A stretch of DNA of 63,529 nt, filler included, from Octopus bimaculoides (Eukaryota): assembly GCF_001194135.2 (NCBI RefSeq). It is 7 parts of 7 records of this genome, joined end to end, with 100 filler letters (N's around TTAATTAATTAA, not from the genome) between each part and the next. Parts side by side here need not be neighbours in the genome. Positions count along the whole stretch, not along the records: positions 11,405 to 17,412 come from NC_069004.1; 6 more parts are not named here. One strand, written 5' to 3'. The translations under genes and the position numbers were made by a program. The notes beneath the pieces are model-generated. The model ran no database searches. It saw only the letters and a program-made list of their open reading frames with translations, and had not been told where the DNA came from. This document shows, piece after piece, positions 2,610-17,350 of this stretch; position 1 is the first letter of the stretch; each line of letters starts with the position of its first letter.

Positions 2610-2900
2610 TTGTATCTTTGTGGTAAGGGTGTTGTGCTCATGATAGTAAGATTATGGTTTCGATACCCAGACTGGGCGATGAGTTGTTCTGATGAGCAAA
2701 ACACTGAATTTCATGTTGCTCCAATACACTCAGCTGCCAAAAATGAGTAACTCTGCAACGGCAACGGCGTTGCACCCAGGAAGGGAATATACATAGGGTA
2801 CAGTTTCGAGGAGCATATAGCTCGGGGAGGATCTGTCTGCCTCGAATCACCTCCTAACTATCCTCAACTTAATGAACATGACTGGGTGGTCTGTGACATA
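2610..2900 (+). mobile_element. Degraded tRNA-derived SINE-like relic
   Basis: B-box-like GGTTTCGATACCC and GACTGGGCG..GAGCAAAACAC resemble the SINE-C head at 22755-22803. A CORE-like TTGCTCCAATACACTCAGCTG follows. Confidence 0.4.
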
Positions 2901-11404: not shown

Positions 11405-11457
<53 letters not shown>

Positions 11458-11526
11458 TATATATACACACACATACATATACACACACACACTCATACAC
11501 ACATATATGTATGTATATATACATAT

Positions 11527-11689
11527 ACGAACCACTTCTTTCAGTTTCTGTCTGCTAAATCCACTCACAAAACTTTGGTTTCTTGGTCTATAGTAGAAGA
11601 CACTTCCTCAAAGTACCATGAAGTGGGGCTGTACCCAGAACCATGAGCTTGGGAAGCAAGCTTCTTACCACACAACCACACCTGTGCCT
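11527..11689 (-). mobile_element. SINE family B, 5' half
   Basis: TTCTTTCAGTTTCTGTCTGCTAAATCCACTCACAA..AGTAGAAGACACTT..CTTACCACACAACCACACCTGTGCCT, next to a (TA)/(CA) tract. Confidence 0.85.
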
Positions 11690-11849
11690 ACTGTTTACTG
11701 TTTATTTTGGGAAAAATTTCTATTTCAATCCATCAAATACAGAATTCCTTTCTCATTGATAGGAGTTAGTTTGGTTAGGACTGGCCTGGGTTGAAGCAAC
11801 ACCAGAAATTTGTCATCAAAGAAGGTCCTATTTGATTGTTTTTGCATAG

Positions 11850-12030: not shown

Positions 12031-13173
12031 TATGGACTCCAGCTAGAAATTTCCCCCGCATCATACTCTAACAACTTGAAAAAATAAAAGAAAGGAAAAG
12101 ACACTGGATAAGGTAGCCCCAAGTACACTGTGCCTGGAAAAAAGAAAAAAAACTACACCAAAAGATGAGAAGGTCGTGGGTGGAGTGCTGTGGATCACAG
12201 GTCTGTCTGACCTGAGTTGACTTGGAGTGAAACAACAATAACAACAACGACAACATCAACAACAGTGAGGAAGAAGAAGAAAGAAAAACAATAACAGTGA
12301 AAAAGAAGAAAAAGAATAACAACAGCAAGGAGGAAGAAAAGGAAGTAGAGGAAGAAGGAAAAGAAGAAGAACAAGAATGGTGAGGGAGAAGAAGAGGAAG
12401 AAGAGGAAGAATAACAACAACAGCAACCGACACAAAAATGTCATTGATGTGTTAAGAATGAGTAACGAAACGAAATGGGTTGGTCAAAAAGTTGAGTCAT
12501 TCTGTTTGAAAAGAGTTGTTTTGTTAAACGAACAACCACTGCAGTGGTTTGTTCAACCTTTTTAAGAGTTGCCCTAACCTGCTGTCTTCATAAAAAATCA
12601 CATAACATGCTATGAATATTCTCATTTAATCAATTAAAACATTGCGTTAACTGTGTAGAAGACTCTATTTGATTGAGCTCAGATGTTGGTGTGAGAAATA
12701 AATGTTTGGTTAACATTTAAGTTTGTTTAATATAGACTGATGTGAAACATTCATAGATTAGAACATTCTGAACTTTGACAATTTTGTGACATATCTTTAC
12801 TGTAATTTAGAGACAAAGGTTCAGAAGTACAGCTCTCTCTCTCTCTCTCCCTCCCCCACTGTGTGTGTGTGTGTGTGTGTGTATCAAGCTTCTAATCTTG
12901 GTACTCCAGGTCAGGCATGATAAACTATTGCATTCTACAAAAGTACAGAGTACATTTTGGTGAGTGTGTAAATATAAAGTCATAAATGACAGAAATAGTT
13001 TGATAAAATTTTATTTAACAATAAGAAAATTCTAATCCCATGACAAATTGTTTCATAACTTAAAAACATGTAAATAATTTATATTATTATACTCAATAAT
13101 AAATAAACTACTTACATGTTTGCATTGATGCAAAATGCTAAAAACCCTTCAAAATAATGCAAGTAATTTATTT

Positions 13174-13260
13174 ATTGGAGCCTGGTGCAGCCATCTGGTT
13201 TCACCAGTCCTCAGTCAAATCGTCCAACCCATGCTAGCATGGAAAACGATAATGACGATA
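13174..13260 (+). mobile_element. SINE/LINE 3' tail fragment
   Basis: TGGAGCCTGGTGCAGCC..CAGTCAAATCGTCCAACCCATGCTAGCATGGAAAA is homologous to 14660-14730 and ends in GAT-like repeats. Confidence 0.65.
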
Positions 13261-13360
13261 ATAATTATTTACATGTTTTTAAGTTATGAAACAATGTGTT
13301 GTGATATTATTTATCATCATTTACATTTGATGGGTATTTGTCCTCATCTTGTTTGATGTT

Positions 13361-13406
13361 AACACAACGTTTCGGCTGATACACCCTCCAGCCTTCGTCA
13401 GGTGTC
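13361..13406 (-). ncRNA. Minimal type I hammerhead ribozyme motif, intact core
   Basis: GACAC-CUGACGA-A-GGCUGG(AGGGUGUA)UCAGCC-GAAAC-GUU-GUGUU. Stem I is 5 bp, the core CUGANGA/GAAA is conserved, stem II is 6 bp, and stem III is the palindrome ACGU. Confidence 0.82.
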
Positions 13407-13484
13407 TTGGGGAAATTTTGAACCTGGGTTTTCATTCCTAAGGTATTCTTCGATGTTATTATTATTATTATTGTTATTATTATT

Positions 13485-13557
13485 CAGGTCACTGCTTGGA
13501 ATCGAACTCGGAATCTTGAGTTTAGTAGCCCCGCACTCTTAACCATTACGCCATATG
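13485..13557 (-). promoter_or_regulatory. tRNA-derived head with Pol III A and B boxes inside the PLE terminal region
   Basis: A box TGGCGTAATGG, anticodon-like loop CT-ACT-AA, B box GAGTTCGATTCC. The acceptor stem is not intact, so this is not a tRNA gene. Confidence 0.75.
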
Positions 13558-13890
13558 TCCGTGGGCAATTATGGAGTGAGTTTTAGGGCTTATAAATCTG
13601 ATATTTTTCTATTCTTCCTTAATACCGGTTCCCATATGCTGCTCATATCTGCACTCAGTCTGCTTAGGAGGTTGTTGTGTCCTAGCATATGTGCTGCTTC
13701 TTTTAGTTTTCGTATTGTTAAATAAAATTTCATCAAACTGTTTCTCTATCATTTATGACTTTATACACTCCTATCATTTTCCCTTATATCGTACTATATA
13801 TTCTCTGTGTTTTGTACAATGATACATTAAGGAGATTTTTCTATGAGTATTATTGGATTACTTGAATCCATATATTGTTACATAAATATA

Positions 13891-13960
13891 TGTGTCTGTG
13901 TGGTAAGAAACTGGCATCCCAACATTGTTCTGGGTTCAGTCCCACTGCATGGCACCTTTG
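13891..13960 (+). mobile_element. SINE family B head fragment
   Basis: CTGTGTGGTAAGAA..GGGTTCAGTCCCACTGCATGGCACCTT. Confidence 0.75.
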
Positions 13961-13974
13961 TAAACAATTCCTAA

Positions 13975-14097
13975 TAATATTTAATTATAAAAATACAGTA
14001 GGACCGTTTTTAAATACGTTCAACAGCTATGGAGGTCCACCCAAGTAAAATAGGAATCAAAGGGGTCCATAAGCAAAAAAAGGGTTGAGAACCACTG
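13975..14097. mobile_element. hAT-like MITE terminal fragment
   Basis: Ends in GGGTTGAGAACCACTG (reverse complement CAGTGGTTCTCAACCC, a hAT/Charlie-type TIR) and has subterminal GGTCCA motifs. Confidence 0.6.
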
Positions 14098-14163
14098 CTT
14101 TAACTTTTTAATAACTTGAGATTCAGAATCTTATAGGAGAGAAAAAGGGGCACAATGTTGATA

Positions 14164-14357
14164 TACTCTTTTACTCTTTTATTTGTTTTATTTACGACGG
14201 GCTTCTTTCAGTTTCCGGCTACCAAATCCACTCACAAGGCTTTGGTTGGCCCGAGGCTATAGTAGAAGACACTTGCCCAAGGTGCCACGCATTGGGAATG
14301 AACCCGGAACCATGTGGTTGGTAAGCAAGCTACTTACCACACAGCCACTCCTGTGCA
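14164..14357 (-). mobile_element. SINE family B with internal deletion
   Basis: 5' half at 14194-14357 is joined directly to the terminal TACTCTTTTACTCTTTTA tail (14164-14181). The microsatellite and 3' body are absent. Confidence 0.85.
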
Positions 14358-14411
14358 CATGGAAAAGTAGGTTATAAAAGTTCTTCATAGAAGCATCCAG
14401 ATGTATGGTAT

Positions 14412-14755
14412 AGGTGCAGGTGTGGCTGTGTGGTAAGAAGCTTGCTTCCCAAACACATAATTCCAGGTTCAGTCCAACAGCATGGCACCTTGGGCAAGTG
14501 TCTTCTATAGTCTCAGACCAAAGCCTTGTGAGTGGATTTGGTAGACGGAAACTGAAAGAAACCCAGTGAAATCATAGCTGTGACCAGTGCTGGTGACACA
14601 TAAAAAGCACCCATGACACTCTGTGGGGTGGTTGGTGTCAGCCATAGAAAACAGATGACTGGAGCCTGGGGCAGCCCTCTGGTTTATCAGTACCAGTCAA
14701 ACCATCTAAACCGTACCAGCAAGGAAAATAGATGCTAAATGATGAGGATGATGAC
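14412..14755 (+). mobile_element. SINE family B head with alternative 3' tail
   Basis: Head and body at 14412-14563 are followed by a tail homologous to 13174-13260, ending in GATGA repeats. Confidence 0.8.
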
Positions 14756-14779
14756 ATGTGTTCATTTTTGTGTATGCGT

Positions 14780-14880
14780 TTATCCCCCACCACTGCTTGA
14801 GAACATGTGTTGGTGTGCCTAAGTCCCTGTAACTTAGTGGTTCAGCAAAAGAGACTGACAGAAGAAGTACCAGGCTTTTA
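14780..14880 (+). mobile_element. SINE family B, 3' half fragment
   Basis: CCCCACCACTGCTTGAGAAC..TGGTGTG..GTAACTTAGTGGTTCAGCAAAAGAGAC matches 15335-15410. Confidence 0.75.
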
Positions 14881-14918
14881 TAAAATATGTATATAAATAT
14901 AAATAAATATATATATGT

Positions 14919-15081
14919 AGGTACAGGAGTGGCTCTGTCGTAAGAAGTTTGCTTCCCAACCACAAAGTACCGGGTTCAGTCCCACTGTGTGGCACCTTGG
15001 GCAAGTGTCTTCTACTATAGCCTTGGGTCGACCAAAGCCTTGTGAGTAGATTTGCTAGATGGAAACTGAAAGAAGCCCATC

Positions 15082-15132
<51 letters not shown>

Positions 15133-15518
15133 CACATATATATATGCATATATATATATATGCATATATATATANNNNNNNNNNNNNNNNNNNNNNNNNN
15201 NNNNNNNNNNNNNNNNNNNNNNNNNNNNNNNNNNNNNNNNNNNNNNNNNNNNNNNNNNNNNNNNNNNNNNNNNNNNNNNNNNNNNNNNNNTATATATATA
15301 TATGTATATATGTATTTGTGTGTCTGTGTTTGACCCCCAGCATCACTTGACAACCAATGTTGGTGTGTTTACATCCCTGTAATTTAGCGGTTCGGCAAAA
15401 GACACTGATAGAATAAATACTAGGCTTACAAAGAATAAGTCCTGGGGTTGATTCAAAGTATCATGCCCCAGCATGGCCATGGTCTAATGACTGAAACAAG
15501 TAAAAGATAAAAGATATA
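14919..15518 (+). mobile_element. Full-length SINE family B with internal (TA)n array (partly gap)
   Basis: tRNA-like head, body to GAAAGAAGCCC, (TA/CA)n, 3' body and GTAAAAGATAAAAGATA tail. Confidence 0.9.
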
Positions 15519-16134
15519 AATGCTTCTGTAGAATGCATTTTAAATATCGTAGATTATGATTCAGACTAATCTAAAAAAAATTATGAAAATCGGTAAAGCT
15601 GAAAAATTACAGAAAAGGGAAAAAAATTATACATACTACTCCATGAAGATTTTTTTTATTTTGCAGTATACTAATCTATGACGCTTAAAACAAATTCACC
15701 TGAAGAAATCATTATTTTTGGTGCAGTAGTTAATTACTATTTCTATTCTTTAGGAACACCTATACAGTCTAAAATCTGAAGAAATTATGGTAAGCCTACA
15801 TCTATCTGTCCATCTGTCTAACTGACATGTCTGTTTGTCTGTCTACCTCTCTGTCTGTTTGTCTACCTCTATCTATTAATCTATTTATCTCTCTGTCTCC
15901 GTCTCTCTCTCTATCTGTCTAGCTGTCTATTTATCTATCTACCTATCTATTTATCTATGCTTTTGTCTGTCTGTCTGATTATATATATAGTCTGACTATA
16001 TATCTACTCACCCAGACATCCAAACATGAAATAGCTTAATGTGTGCGTGGATGTGTATAGATGTCCACACACCTAAAGAGGAAGGGTATAGTTCATTGCA
16101 CATAATCTGACTATATATATATATTGAGTATGTG

Positions 16135-16179
<45 letters not shown>

Positions 16180-17350
16180 TCATAGACAAATACAGGTATA
16201 TCAAATACCATACAACATAAACTCTTGCTTTATTAAAATTATCTCCACCTCTTGAGGATGTGATGTAATTACCAAATAGCAATTGAAACCAGCTCTATTT
16301 GAGAAGAGGGGATAAGGTCAAGATTGAAGACTTCTCAAAAACTGACATGCCATTAAGCAAAAGGATAGGTTTATTATCTGGAGATAAGAGGACAGTCATG
16401 AAGACTTGTTTCTGCCTATATAGGCATCATCAGCAAAACAATTGTCTTAACCCGCACTCCATGTAGACTTTTAAGCTAGCTTCTGCAGAGGGCCAATTGG
16501 GCCTGTAGCTCAAAACTAAAGAAAGCTAAATAGCATGACTATAATACGTCTATAATGACTATATGCCCTGGTGGTGTTTGATCAGAGGTTAAAGATGGAT
16601 GAGAATTAATTCTGTAATGAAAATCTTCTATTGTTCCAGTCCCAAGTTGAATTCCAACTGTTGGCCAATTTGTCCCAAAGTTCTCATCTCAACGTAAAAT
16701 TAATGAAGTGGATGTCATTTATCTCCCCTTTGATATCTGACATCATATGACAAACACCAACCAAGATGGCATGAATCAGCCAAGCTTTATCTTCTAGAAA
16801 TAGCAGCCCAAATGTATTTAAATCAGATCCCAATGTTGAATGTTCAAGAACCAAATCAAGGGCAGATTTTCAATCCCAGGATCATCCTGATTCCAAAAGG
16901 TATAATATGTCTATGTAGACCAAATATAGACTGAGATCAGGGGTCCCAGACAGACGGAATTTCATGTTTTATTATTATAAAAGAGTAGAACACATTTAAA
17001 CTGGATATATTAAACAGCCCAAATATTCTATCTGTTTTATGCTCAAACTGGCCAGATTTAGTCTCTTACACCTACCTTGCAATGTCATTTTGGAAATAAG
17101 TAATTACATATACAGACTGAAACAAGGAAAAGATAAAAGATATCTTTGACACGTGAAAGAATTTACTGACAATGTTGCAATGAAATTCCCTGAAGATAAA
17201 ATTACAGGTGTTATGTAACGATACCTGTGATGGTTTTACTGTGGACTCAAAAAGACATTACACAAACACATCTTGTAACATTCTGTTCAGTTCAACATGT
17301 CATCAGTTTTAGAATAACATTTTGTCGTTCTTTTCATGCAATTAAGTACA

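What the first reader, a model, noticed from the sequence alone, without database searches (positions are those of the whole stretch)
13361..13406. Intact minimal hammerhead ribozyme (Penelope type) on the minus strand
Seen: GACAC CUGACGA A GGCUGG-AGGGUGUA-UCAGCC GAAAC GUU/GUGUU. All core nucleotides are present, stem I is GACAC:GUGUU, stem II is 6 bp, and there is an extra A between A9 and G10.1. Stem III is reduced to the self-complementary ACGU. Established: Penelope-like elements carry minimal type I hammerheads with palindromic stem III proposed to act as dimers, and an extra nucleotide after A9 is tolerated in the CChMVd viroid hammerhead. Inference: self-cleavage after GUU, between 13366 and 13365. 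The second copy has A-U where this one has G.U in stem II, preserving pairing.
Basis: partly seen in the sequence, partly recalled or inferred. Interest (0 to 1): 0.85.

Follow-up and report, generated by a model that had tools for sequence, protein, structure and literature searches.

The report
Solo Penelope-type minimal hammerhead ribozyme relic
The sequence really does contain a complete minimal hammerhead ribozyme motif of the kind carried by Penelope-like retrotransposons. It is an isolated leftover copy in repeat-rich octopod DNA, a known and common kind of element rather than a new one.

Summary
The motif is present exactly as described, on the minus strand at 13406->13361. It reads GACAC | CUGACGA | A | GGCUGG-AGGGUGUA-UCAGCC | GAA | ACGU | U^ | GUGUU, with the predicted cut between 13366 and 13365.

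It shows every sequence feature published for Penelope-like element (PLE) minimal hammerheads:
- an extra nucleotide after A9;
- a G10.1-C11.1 pair;
- a 6-bp helix II;
- an open 5-bp helix I;
- no helix III, and a palindromic ACGU in its place.

Chance is unlikely. No full motif appeared in 500 Mb of random sequence.

A metagenome scan for the same core signature returned 93 loci, mostly animal host DNA. In three independent families the motif lies just downstream of a PLE reverse transcriptase/GIY-YIG endonuclease reading frame.

In the window itself the copy is solo. There is no second hammerhead, no RT or endonuclease remnant and no tandem repeat in the 6-kb piece.

It most likely sits in a ~131-nt 5'-truncated PLE 3' end inserted into an (AAT)n tract beside a tRNA-like pol III module. 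A composite SINE is the main rival.

Activity is untested. Folding energies and published assays predict little or no cleavage without a partner copy. This is a known kind of element, of low interest.

The parts
13361..13406 (-). Minimal type I hammerhead motif: helix I 13402-13406 / 13361-13365; core CUGACGA 13395-13401; extra A 13394; helix II 13388-13393 / 13374-13379; loop 2 13380-13387; GAA 13371-13373; palindromic ACGU 13367-13370; U17 13366. Predicted cut between 13366 and 13365.
   Evidence: Direct reading; core pattern once vs 0.01 expected; 0 full motifs in 500 Mb of random sequence; covariance model R1 38.7 bits, E 5e-10.
13324..13454 (-). Inferred 5'-truncated PLE 3'-terminal fragment (~131 nt) carrying the hammerhead: 48 nt upstream of helix I and 41 nt downstream of its 3' strand (42 nt after the cut). 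The downstream part is A/C-rich.
   Evidence: Bounded by (AAT)n upstream and a degenerate AAT-like run downstream. In the gutless-worm PLE family, conservation ends about 65 nt after the cut. Published PLEs carry the HHR near the 3' end and insert at AT-rich/ATT sites and microsatellites (PMC11167929, PMC8557442). The boundaries are inference; no other copy was available.
13456..13484 (.). (AAT)n/(TTA)n microsatellite, 9.7 units, immediately upstream of the fragment on the hammerhead strand. Proposed insertion target, or the tail of the neighbouring SINE.
   Evidence: Tandem Repeats Finder.
13310..13323 (.). Degenerate AAT-like run (TAAATGATGATAAA on the minus strand) downstream of the fragment. 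Possibly the other half of the split microsatellite.
   Evidence: Direct reading; inference.
13498..13553 (-). tRNA-like pol III type-2 promoter module on the hammerhead strand: A box TGGCGTAATGG (13553->13543) and B box AGTTCGATTCC (13508->13498), 34 nt apart, each one mismatch from consensus. It lies about 90 nt upstream of the hammerhead.
   Evidence: Box scan: 1 hit vs 0.003 expected per shuffled piece. Not recognised as a tRNA by ARAGORN or by Rfam.
13310..13706 (-). A 397-nt block present in only one arm of an older nested inverted repeat. It holds an unassigned 150-odd nt stretch, the tRNA-like module, (AAT)n and the hammerhead fragment. It is best read as one or more insertions into that arm.
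   Evidence: Arms A 12973-13029 / A' 13707-13765 (92-95% complementary) and B 13033-13084 / B' 13258-13309 (87%). A and B are 3 nt apart in one arm and 397 nt apart in the other. A possible target-site duplication, GAAAACTAA / GATAAATAA, is inconclusive.

Best explanation
The site is a genuine minimal type I hammerhead motif of the class carried in the terminal repeats of Penelope-like retrotransposons (PLEs). It survives here as a solo relic.

The most likely history (inferred):
1. A PLE transcript was reverse-transcribed from its 3' end.
2. The copy was severely 5'-truncated, leaving about 131 nt (13454->13324).
3. That fragment landed in an (AAT)n tract, which is the AT-rich/ATT kind of site that PLE endonucleases cut.
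4. The tract lay next to a tRNA-derived pol III module, inside one arm of an older inverted repeat in an octopod genome.

The RNA has no helix III of its own. Catalysis would need a second copy, so that the two ACGU tetranucleotides pair into a shared helix III and the helix I strands swap (a double hammerhead). Each copy would then be cut after U17, here between 13366 and 13365, leaving a 2',3'-cyclic phosphate and a 5'-OH.

No partner lies within 6 kb, so this copy is most probably catalytically idle.

Shown: the motif, its statistical significance, its match to the published class, the link between this class and PLE reading frames in other animals, and the absence of a partner or coding remnant here.

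Inferred: the insertion history, the fragment boundaries, the octopod host, and any catalytic activity.
For: Motif and class
- All core and stem features were read directly.
- Chance is excluded at the scale of the piece and is unlikely at genome scale.
- Every feature matches those listed in PMC4209133.

The class in other DNA
- A metagenome scan for the same core signature, with helix I and the inner part of helix II left free, gave 93 loci.
- Of 53 unique sequences, 58% have a helix II of at least 5 bp, against about 5% expected. Helix II sequences differ between families: GGCUUC/GAAGCC, GGAGGCA/UGCUUCC, GGUCA/UGACC, GGCAG/CUGCC, GGUAGG/CCUGCC.
- 7 of 10 pairs show changes on both sides.

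Link to PLE reading frames
- L067 has a 631-aa ORF with RVT_1 (E 1e-8) and GIY-YIG (22.9 bits, above Pfam's cut-off). A same-class hammerhead lies 128 nt downstream on the same strand.
- RT/EN remnants lie just upstream of the hammerhead in L030/L047 and in the gutless-worm family. In L053 the EN frame ends 31 nt before the HHR.
- The worm family loses conservation about 65 nt after the cut, which marks the 3' end of the element. In the window the block ends 42-56 nt after the cut.

Host
- PLEs are abundant and recently active in Octopus (PMC13282606).
- The window's SINEs match Argonauta hians DNA at 77-88%.

Insertion
- An insertion into one arm of an inverted repeat is shown.
- The PLE endonuclease's preference for ATT/AT-rich DNA and microsatellites is published (PMC11167929; PMC8557442).
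Against: - No other copy of this element from the same genome could be obtained. There is therefore no family consensus, no within-family covariation, and no direct proof that these flanks belong to a PLE.
- No RT or GIY-YIG remnant was found in the piece. Pfam on six frames over 12400-15000 found nothing. tblastn with the L067 PLE protein gave a best E of 0.18.
- Rfam's hammerhead models give no hit even at E<=10 on 111 nt.
- Nearest-neighbour energies do not favour the active fold. The monomer MFE is -14.4 kcal/mol and pairs core GACG with CGUU. The double hammerhead is -22.3, against -28.8 for two monomers and -33.2 for the best dimer.
- The covariance model and the metagenome set were ascertained with a pattern taken from this motif.
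- The fragment boundaries and the target-site duplication are weak.
- A tRNA-like pol III module on the same strand fits a composite SINE equally well.
Confidence: 0.7

Rival explanations
1. The hammerhead is the 3' module of a composite, PLE-dependent SINE. The proposed layout is a tRNA-derived pol III head (A/B boxes at 13553-13498), an internal (AAT)n tract, then a PLE-derived tail that includes the min-HHR and is recognised by a PLE reverse transcriptase. This is analogous to the Sm-alpha/Sj-alpha SINE-like elements of schistosomes. Pol III transcripts would carry the ribozyme.
For: - The A and B boxes lie on the same strand about 90-140 nt upstream of the hammerhead (1 hit vs 0.003 expected).
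- Head, microsatellite and hammerhead all lie within one 397-nt block that interrupts an inverted-repeat arm.
- The distance from the A box to the end of the block is about 245 nt, a typical SINE length.
- There is precedent: Sm-alpha is a tRNA-Gln-derived SINE bearing a hammerhead (PMC2770079).
- SINE tails commonly copy the 3' end of their partner element, and in PLEs that is where the HHR sits (PMC8557442).
Against: - The block begins about 140 nt upstream of where a pol III SINE should start.
- An (AAT)n tract directly after the tRNA-like part looks like an ordinary SINE tail. AAT-like sequence recurs after the hammerhead fragment, as expected if the fragment split a pre-existing microsatellite.
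- The tRNA-like part is not recognised by ARAGORN or Rfam.
- No second copy of the composite could be found.
Confidence: 0.2
2. It is a monomeric or decayed copy of a metazoan non-LTR retrozyme. These are short tandem repeats with type I hammerheads that spread through circular RNA.
For: - Retrozymes with type I hammerheads occur in molluscs and many other invertebrates (PMC7229834).
- A 2026 preprint derives them from PLE terminal repeats and reports monomeric copies (10.64898/2026.07.22.740005).
Against: - There is no tandem repeat of 150-450 nt around the site and no second hammerhead.
- Retrozyme hammerheads are canonical: closed helix I, loop 1-loop 2 contacts, a short helix II and a small helix III hairpin. 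This motif instead has the open 5-bp helix I, 6-bp helix II, extra A and missing helix III. PMC7229834 itself assigns those features to the 'atypical minimal variants' of PLEs.
Confidence: 0.05
3. It is a chance match to a short degenerate descriptor in AT-rich, repeat-laden DNA, with no evolutionary link to any ribozyme.
For: - The descriptor is short.
- Rfam finds no hammerhead.
- The MFE z-score is only -1.08.
- With relaxed stem thresholds, the partial frequencies extrapolate to about 0.6 full matches per ~5.6 Gb of double-stranded search space. A scan of a whole genome could therefore turn up one by chance.
Against: - There were 0 full motifs in 500 Mb of random sequence. The expectation at the observed stem lengths is about 0.04-0.1 per genome (inference).
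- Features that were not selected for also match the class: the extra nucleotide after A9, the helix lengths, and a position 42-56 nt from the end of an inserted block next to an ATT-type microsatellite.
- Octopod genomes are rich in PLEs.
Confidence: 0.05

Closest known systems
Minimal hammerheads (min-HHRs) in the terminal repeats of metazoan Penelope-like elements (Cercyon, Xena/Poseidon, Neptune; Cervera & de la Pena 2014, PMC4209133)
   Same: Type I topology with an open, short helix I (5 bp). Long helix II (6 bp). An unpaired nucleotide between A9 and G10.1. A G10.1-C11.1 pair. No helix III, and palindromic 15.2/16.2 (ACGU). The copy is dispersed and solo, as most genomic copies are reported to be.
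   Different: No PLE reading frame or second terminal repeat is nearby. The host lineage (an octopod cephalopod, inferred) is not among the species examined in that paper. No family consensus or activity data exist for this copy.
Metagenome locus L067 (Ga0137376_10073776): a PLE with an RT + GIY-YIG reading frame followed by a hammerhead of the same signature
   Same: Identical core signature CUGAUGA-A-GG...CC-GAAACGUU|G. Helix II is 6 bp (GGUAGG/CCUGCC) and helix I is open and 4 bp.
   Different: L067 keeps the 631-aa RT-EN frame 128 nt upstream of the hammerhead. The window keeps only about 48 nt upstream of the motif. The stem sequences and flanks are unrelated.
Sm-alpha / Sj-alpha SINE-like elements of Schistosoma (Ferbeyre et al. 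1998, via PMC2770079)
   Same: A tRNA-derived pol III module and a hammerhead lie on the same strand within a few hundred nucleotides.
   Different: Sm-alpha is a proven high-copy composite. Here the link between the head and the hammerhead is unproven and the motif is the minimal PLE type.
Dimer-dependent hammerheads of newt/axolotl satellite repeats (HHR_Amex1; PMC7229834)
   Same: Helix III is too weak for monomer activity. The palindromic sequence allows a double hammerhead between two copies.
   Different: Those are canonical motifs with loop 1-loop 2 contacts, arranged in ~330-nt tandem arrays. They keep one helix III base pair plus a tetraloop. Here there is no loop 3 at all and no tandem array.
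CChMVd (+) viroid hammerhead with an extra A after A9 (De la Pena & Flores 2001, cited in PMC4209133)
   Same: An additional nucleotide lies between A9 and G10.1.
   Different: That is a type III viroid ribozyme with full helices. The similarity is limited to this one position.

Membership tests
Hammerhead ribozyme, minimal type I variant of PLEs (min-HHR) | Catalytic boxes C3-U4-G5-A6-N7-G8-A9, G12-A13-A14, and U16.1-H17 at the cleavage site | tested here: met
   CUGACGA, GAA and U-U are read at 13401-13395, 13373-13371 and 13367-13366. The core pattern occurs once vs 0.01 expected.
Hammerhead ribozyme, minimal type I variant of PLEs (min-HHR) | One unpaired nucleotide between A9 and G10.1 | tested here: met
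   A at 13394. Listed as a conserved feature of the class in PMC4209133.
Hammerhead ribozyme, minimal type I variant of PLEs (min-HHR) | G10.1-C11.1 closing pair and a long helix II (6-8 bp) | tested here: met
   GGCUGG/UCAGCC: 6 bp, of which 5 are Watson-Crick and 1 is G.U, starting with G10.1-C11.1.
Hammerhead ribozyme, minimal type I variant of PLEs (min-HHR) | Short, open helix I (4-5 bp) | tested here: met
   GACAC/GUGUU, 5 bp including a terminal G.U. The flanks (A opposite A) do not extend it.
Hammerhead ribozyme, minimal type I variant of PLEs (min-HHR) | No helix III hairpin; palindromic 15.2/16.2, so that two copies can form a shared helix III | tested here: met
   A15.1-C-G-U16.1 = ACGU, which is self-complementary. 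The double-hammerhead pairing can be drawn without a pseudoknot, at -22.3 kcal/mol.
Hammerhead ribozyme, minimal type I variant of PLEs (min-HHR) | Compensatory changes in the stems among genomic copies of the same family | not testable with these tools
   No other copy from the source genome could be reached. Between-family covariation in unrelated animals was seen, but that set was ascertained with this motif's core.
Hammerhead ribozyme, minimal type I variant of PLEs (min-HHR) | Self-cleavage after H17 as a dimer or with the PLE protein | not testable with these tools
   This needs in vitro transcription. The literature reports low activity for this class (PMC4209133) and protein-assisted cleavage in PAc (PMC11167929).
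Rfam hammerhead families (Hammerhead_1 RF00163 and relatives) | Covariance-model score at or above the gathering threshold | tested here: not met
   No hammerhead family is listed even at E<=10, either on the whole piece or on 111 nt around the site. I do not file the motif under these Rfam families. The likely cause is the missing helix III, which is my inference and not something I checked.
Penelope-like element (as a retroelement copy) | Single ORF with a PLE reverse transcriptase and a GIY-YIG endonuclease next to the hammerhead-bearing terminal repeat | tested here: not met
   There is no ORF over 121 aa in the piece. Pfam found nothing on six frames over 12400-15000. tblastn with the L067 PLE protein gave a best E of 0.18. 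The locus is at most a short truncated fragment, not a PLE copy.
Penelope-like element (as a retroelement copy) | Hammerhead near the 3' end of the inserted unit; insertion at AT-rich/ATT or microsatellite sites; 5' truncation | tested here: inconclusive
   The block ends 42-56 nt after the cut and is flanked by (AAT)n and an AAT-like run. This is consistent and PMC11167929. However, the boundaries rest on one inverted-repeat comparison and the target-site duplication is weak.
Metazoan non-LTR retrozyme | Tandem repeats of ~150-450 nt, each with a canonical type I hammerhead (closed helix I, loop 1-loop 2 contacts) | tested here: not met
   No such tandem repeat. A single hammerhead. Helix I is open and there is no loop 1.
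Sm-alpha-type SINE with a hammerhead | tRNA-derived pol III promoter and a hammerhead in one repeated unit | tested here: inconclusive
   A and B boxes are present on the same strand, but no tRNA call was obtained. Whether head and hammerhead recur together could not be tested.

The most novel reading that the evidence does not exclude
The tRNA-like pol III head, the (AAT)n tract and the min-HHR fragment are one unit. That unit would be a cephalopod SINE that borrowed the hammerhead-bearing 3' end of a Penelope-like element and is mobilised by PLE reverse transcriptase. It would be a minimal-hammerhead counterpart of the schistosome Sm-alpha elements, and a concrete example of a PLE-dependent SINE.
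Probability: 0.2. Interest if true: 0.4.

Novelty: new member of a known kind. Interest (0 to 1): 0.15.

Why it matters
It matters little on its own. Minimal hammerheads of this type are already known to occur in thousands of dispersed, mostly solo copies in metazoan genomes that carry Penelope-like elements.

The copy adds an instance in what appears to be an octopod genome. It also shows that the motif class can be recognised from sequence alone even though Rfam's hammerhead models miss it.

Two modest points of value remain:
- Annotation pipelines based on Rfam will under-report these ribozymes in cephalopod assemblies.
- If the neighbouring tRNA-like module proves to be part of the same element, it would document a PLE-dependent SINE. 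That would bear on how PLE reverse transcriptases recognise their templates.

Tried and rejected
- **Rfam cmscan**, on the whole piece and on 111 nt around the site, at E<=10: no hammerhead family. The mir-297, mir-3149 and similar hits are (AT)n/(AC)n microsatellite artefacts.
- **Single-strand MFE**: z = -1.08, and the MFE pairs core GACG with CGUU. Thermodynamic folding does not single out the motif.
- **Other copies in the source genome**, all without result:
  - protein-database searches with six-frame peptides across the hammerhead and across the rest of the 397-nt block;
  - exact look-ups of three window ORFs, none on record;
  - a viral-contig scan with a family-specific pattern, 0 hits;
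  - the one Argonauta hians locus reached through a SINE peptide, which has no hammerhead.
- **BLAST of the window** against the 93 metagenome loci: only the microsatellite and the hammerhead core match, with no shared flanks.
- **PLE coding remnants in the window**: Pfam on both strands over 12400-15000 and tblastn with the L067 PLE protein were negative. Searches failed because the translations contained stop codons.
- **tRNA identity of the neighbouring module**: ARAGORN and Rfam were negative. Only the A/B box scan is positive.
- **PDB sequence search** with the L067 ORF: uninformative.
- **Rejected readings**: a retrozyme array (no tandem repeat), a gene-embedded conserved hammerhead (no coding or conservation evidence), and the idea that the inverted repeats are the PLE's own inverted truncated copies (the hammerhead block is in only one arm).

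Full report
**Observation**

Read on the minus strand from 13406 to 13361, the sequence is GACAC CUGACGA A GGCUGG AGGGUGUA UCAGCC GAA ACGU U GUGUU. This maps onto a type I hammerhead as follows:
- Helix I is GACAC/GUGUU, 5 bp, the outermost pair a G.U.
- The core C3-A9 is CUGACGA.
- One extra A follows A9.
- Helix II is GGCUGG/UCAGCC, 6 bp, beginning with G10.1-C11.1 and ending with a G.U. It is capped by an 8-nt loop.
- G12-A13-A14 is GAA.
- A15.1-C15.2-G16.2-U16.1 is the self-complementary ACGU, with no loop 3.
- H17 is U.

A core-pattern search finds one site only, and a covariance-model search finds nothing else above 9.5 bits.

**Is it more than chance?**

The core pattern alone is expected 0.01 times per window. 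I searched 500 Mb of random sequence with the piece's base composition, using a descriptor that allowed zero or one extra nucleotide after A9.
- 174 core matches were found.
- 44 of them had the palindrome, 7 had a helix II of at least 5 bp, and 6 had a helix I of at least 4 bp.
- None combined all three.

Multiplying these fractions gives about 1e-6 expected for the 6-kb piece. At the observed stem lengths it gives roughly 0.04-0.1 for a ~2.8-Gb genome read on both strands. That extrapolation is my inference and assumes independence. Chance is therefore negligible for the piece and unlikely even for a genome-wide scan.

Thermodynamic folding does not help. The MFE z-score is -1.08, and the MFE pairs core GACG with CGUU. 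Rfam lists no hammerhead family even at E<=10 on 111 nt.

**What class is it?**

Cervera & de la Pena 2014 (PMC4209133) describe the minimal hammerheads of metazoan PLEs. Their features are:
- a long helix II (6-8 bp);
- a short helix I (4-5 bp) with no defined loop 1;
- a conserved G10.1-C11.1 pair;
- palindromic 15.2-16.2 with no helix III.

They also report that these motifs are mostly dispersed as single copies attributed to truncated PLEs. The window's motif shows every one of these features.

**Independent look at the class**

No copy from the source genome could be reached (see below), so I scanned the metagenome collection. The pattern was CTGAYGAAGG-N14-22-CCGAAACGTTG, which fixes the core, the extra A and two helix II pairs. 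It leaves helix I and the inner part of helix II free.
- The scan returned 93 loci. Judged by contig-name prefixes (an inference; no sample metadata was returned), most appear to be animal host DNA from gutless-worm and termite-gut metagenomes. About eight GC-rich bacterial contigs look like chance hits.
- Of 53 unique sequences, 58% have a helix II of at least 5 bp, against about 5% expected. Different families use different helix II sequences.
- On a 27-sequence alignment, 7 of 10 pairs show changes on both sides. The covariation score is 0.51, against 0.17 for shuffles and at most 0.18 for slid partners. Those 27 sequences were selected for helix II pairing, so only the helix I result and the between-family diversity are unbiased.

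**Link to PLE reading frames**

[quoted passage not shown] The endonuclease motif reads IYKIDCLNCDASYVGET...R...QH. A hammerhead of the same signature lies 128 nt downstream on the same strand.
- tblastn with that ORF finds RT/EN remnants directly upstream of the hammerhead in L030/L047 and in the worm family. In L053 the EN frame ends 31 nt before the motif.
- In the worm family, conservation runs from about 110 nt before the motif to about 65 nt after the cut, and then collapses. Many copies have an inverted hammerhead about 300 nt upstream.

These patterns match published PLE architecture: the hammerhead near the 3' end, 5' truncation, and inverted truncated copies (PMC8557442).

**Context in the window**

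The piece is eukaryotic, AT-rich and full of microsatellites and SINE copies. It has no ORF above 121 aa.

A peptide from its commonest SINE matches a hypothetical protein of Argonauta hians. That locus shares the SINE at 77-88% identity. The host is therefore probably an octopod (inference). Octopus genomes carry many PLEs, with 31 recently active families in O. vulgaris (PMC13282606).

Around the hammerhead there is no tandem repeat, no second hammerhead, and no RT or GIY-YIG trace on either strand.

A nested inverted repeat gives a natural 'empty site' for comparison. Arms A (12973-13029) and B (13033-13084) are 3 nt apart. Their partners B' (13258-13309) and A' (13707-13765) are separated by 397 nt. 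On the hammerhead strand, that extra block contains, in order:
1. 150-odd nt that I could not assign.
2. A tRNA-like pol III module, with an A box at 13553-13543 and a B box at 13508-13498. The box scan gave 1 hit vs 0.003 expected, but ARAGORN and Rfam do not call a tRNA.
3. (AAT)n at 13484-13456.
4. A 131-nt stretch (13454-13324) with the hammerhead in the middle.
5. A degenerate AAT-like run (13323-13310).

A possible target-site duplication, GAAAACTAA / GATAAATAA, is too weak to count.

**Most likely mechanism and history**

The green anole PLE endonuclease cuts AT-rich DNA at 5'-ATT-3'. Its reverse transcription starts inside the RNA, 111-118 nt into the ORF, while the hammerhead cut lies 26 nt into the ORF. 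By my subtraction that places the RT start about 85-92 nt downstream of the cut (PMC11167929). PLEs also favour microsatellite targets (PMC8557442).

The simplest reading is that a heavily 5'-truncated PLE copy, consisting only of its 3' terminus with the hammerhead, inserted into a pre-existing (AAT)n tract. That tract was probably the tail of the adjacent tRNA-derived element, and the insertion split it.

As RNA the motif lacks helix III. It could reach an active fold only by pairing its ACGU with that of a second copy and swapping helix I strands. I could draw that double hammerhead without a pseudoknot, at -22.3 kcal/mol. Two separate monomers (-28.8) and a plain extended duplex (-33.2) are both predicted to be more stable.

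This agrees with three published findings. Monomers are inactive, dimers are weakly active (PMC4209133), and the anole PLE hammerhead needs its protein and is dispensable for insertion in vitro (PMC11167929). With no partner within 6 kb, this copy is most probably a silent relic whose sequence happens to be intact.

**Rivals**

- *Composite SINE.* The tRNA-like head on the same strand raises the possibility of head, (AAT)n and a PLE-derived tail with the hammerhead forming one unit, like the tRNA-Gln-derived Sm-alpha elements of schistosomes (PMC2770079). I cannot exclude it. Against it, the inserted block starts about 140 nt too far upstream, and AAT-like sequence flanks the hammerhead fragment on both sides. 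I give it about 0.2.
- *Decayed non-LTR retrozyme.* This is unlikely. Retrozymes are tandem arrays with canonical hammerheads (PMC7229834), and neither feature is present here.
- *Pure chance.* This is unlikely for the statistical reasons above, and because features that were not selected for also fit the class.

**What could not be done**

I could not recover any other copy from the source genome. Protein-database searches with six-frame peptides, exact look-ups of window ORFs and a viral-contig scan all failed. Within-family conservation and covariation, the true element boundaries, and the link or lack of link to the tRNA-like head therefore remain open. Catalysis is untested.

**Verdict**

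The element is a further instance of a well-described and very abundant class, here as an isolated relic. Interest is low (0.15). Novelty: a new member of a known kind.

Noticed in passing
window 11523-11707, 13891-13958, 14189-14356, 14411-14565, 14918-15088: Five full or partial copies, in both orientations, of one SINE-like repeat (GGTAAGAAGCTTGCTTCCCAA...GGTTCAGTCCCACTG...GACCAAAGCCTTGTGAGTGGATTTGG...GAAACTGAAAGAAGCCC), 76-92% alike. A peptide read from it matches a hypothetical protein of Argonauta hians, and that locus (L094 10040-10154) shares the repeat at 77-88%. The window is therefore probably octopod DNA.
   Followed up: partly
window 12973-13084 and 13258-13765: A nested inverted repeat: A 12973-13029 / A' 13707-13765 at 92-95%, and B 13033-13084 / B' 13258-13309 at 87%. 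One arm is interrupted by the 397-nt block that holds the hammerhead. The 173-nt spacer contains another repeat. The nature of the inverted repeat itself (MITE, foldback) was not determined.
   Followed up: partly
window 13498-13553 (-): Pol III A box (TGGCGTAATGG) and B box (AGTTCGATTCC), 34 nt apart and each one mismatch from consensus. This is the only such pair in the piece (0.003 expected). The stretch is not called as a tRNA by ARAGORN or Rfam.
   Followed up: partly
window 13554-13706 (-): 150-odd nt at the 5' end of the inserted block that I could not assign to any element. There is no protein-family or database match.
   Followed up: partly
window 13176-13201 and 14660-14685: A second short repeat family (TGGAGCCTGGTGCAGCCATCTGGTTT, 92% alike), continuing towards ...CCATGCTAGCATGGAAAAC. 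It was not characterised.
   Followed up: no
window 15175-15290: A run of 116 N (an assembly gap) flanked on both sides by (AT)n. The 'palindromes' I3/I4 and several long ORFs reported there are artefacts of the N run.
   Followed up: no
window 12227-12451: A purine-rich low-complexity tract, (AAC)n then (GAA)n-like, on the plus strand. It gives a strong GC/AT skew and spurious ORFs.
   Followed up: no
window 11412-11530, 15073-15174, 16111-16199: Rfam 'mir-297', 'mir-3149', 'mir-466' and similar matches (E down to 2e-6, all far below gathering scores) fall on (AT)n/(AC)n microsatellites and are artefacts.
   Followed up: yes
L067 589-2481 (-) and 426-460 (-); also 2727-2846 (+): A metagenome contig (26% GC around the motif) with an apparently intact PLE reading frame (RVT_1 + GIY-YIG), followed 128 nt later by a min-HHR. 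A 40-aa piece of the same RT is repeated in inverted orientation at the 5' side, which is the classic PLE inverted truncated copy.
   Followed up: partly
worm-family loci, e.g. L001-L002, L006-L008, L053, L070: A high-copy min-HHR family in contigs from what look (by contig-name prefix) like gutless-worm metagenomes (GGCUUC/GAAGCC helix II, only a 3-bp helix I). The end of a GIY-YIG frame lies 31 nt upstream of the motif. Conservation stops about 65 nt after the cut. An inverted hammerhead is often present about 300 nt upstream.
   Followed up: partly
L016, L058, L061, L084 (same sequence); L019, L023, L044, L074: GC-rich bacterial contigs that match the hammerhead core pattern but have only a 2-4-bp helix II and helix I of 0-1 bp. 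In L016, L023, L061 and L084 the match lies inside a long ORF. These look like chance matches and were left out of the model.
   Followed up: partly
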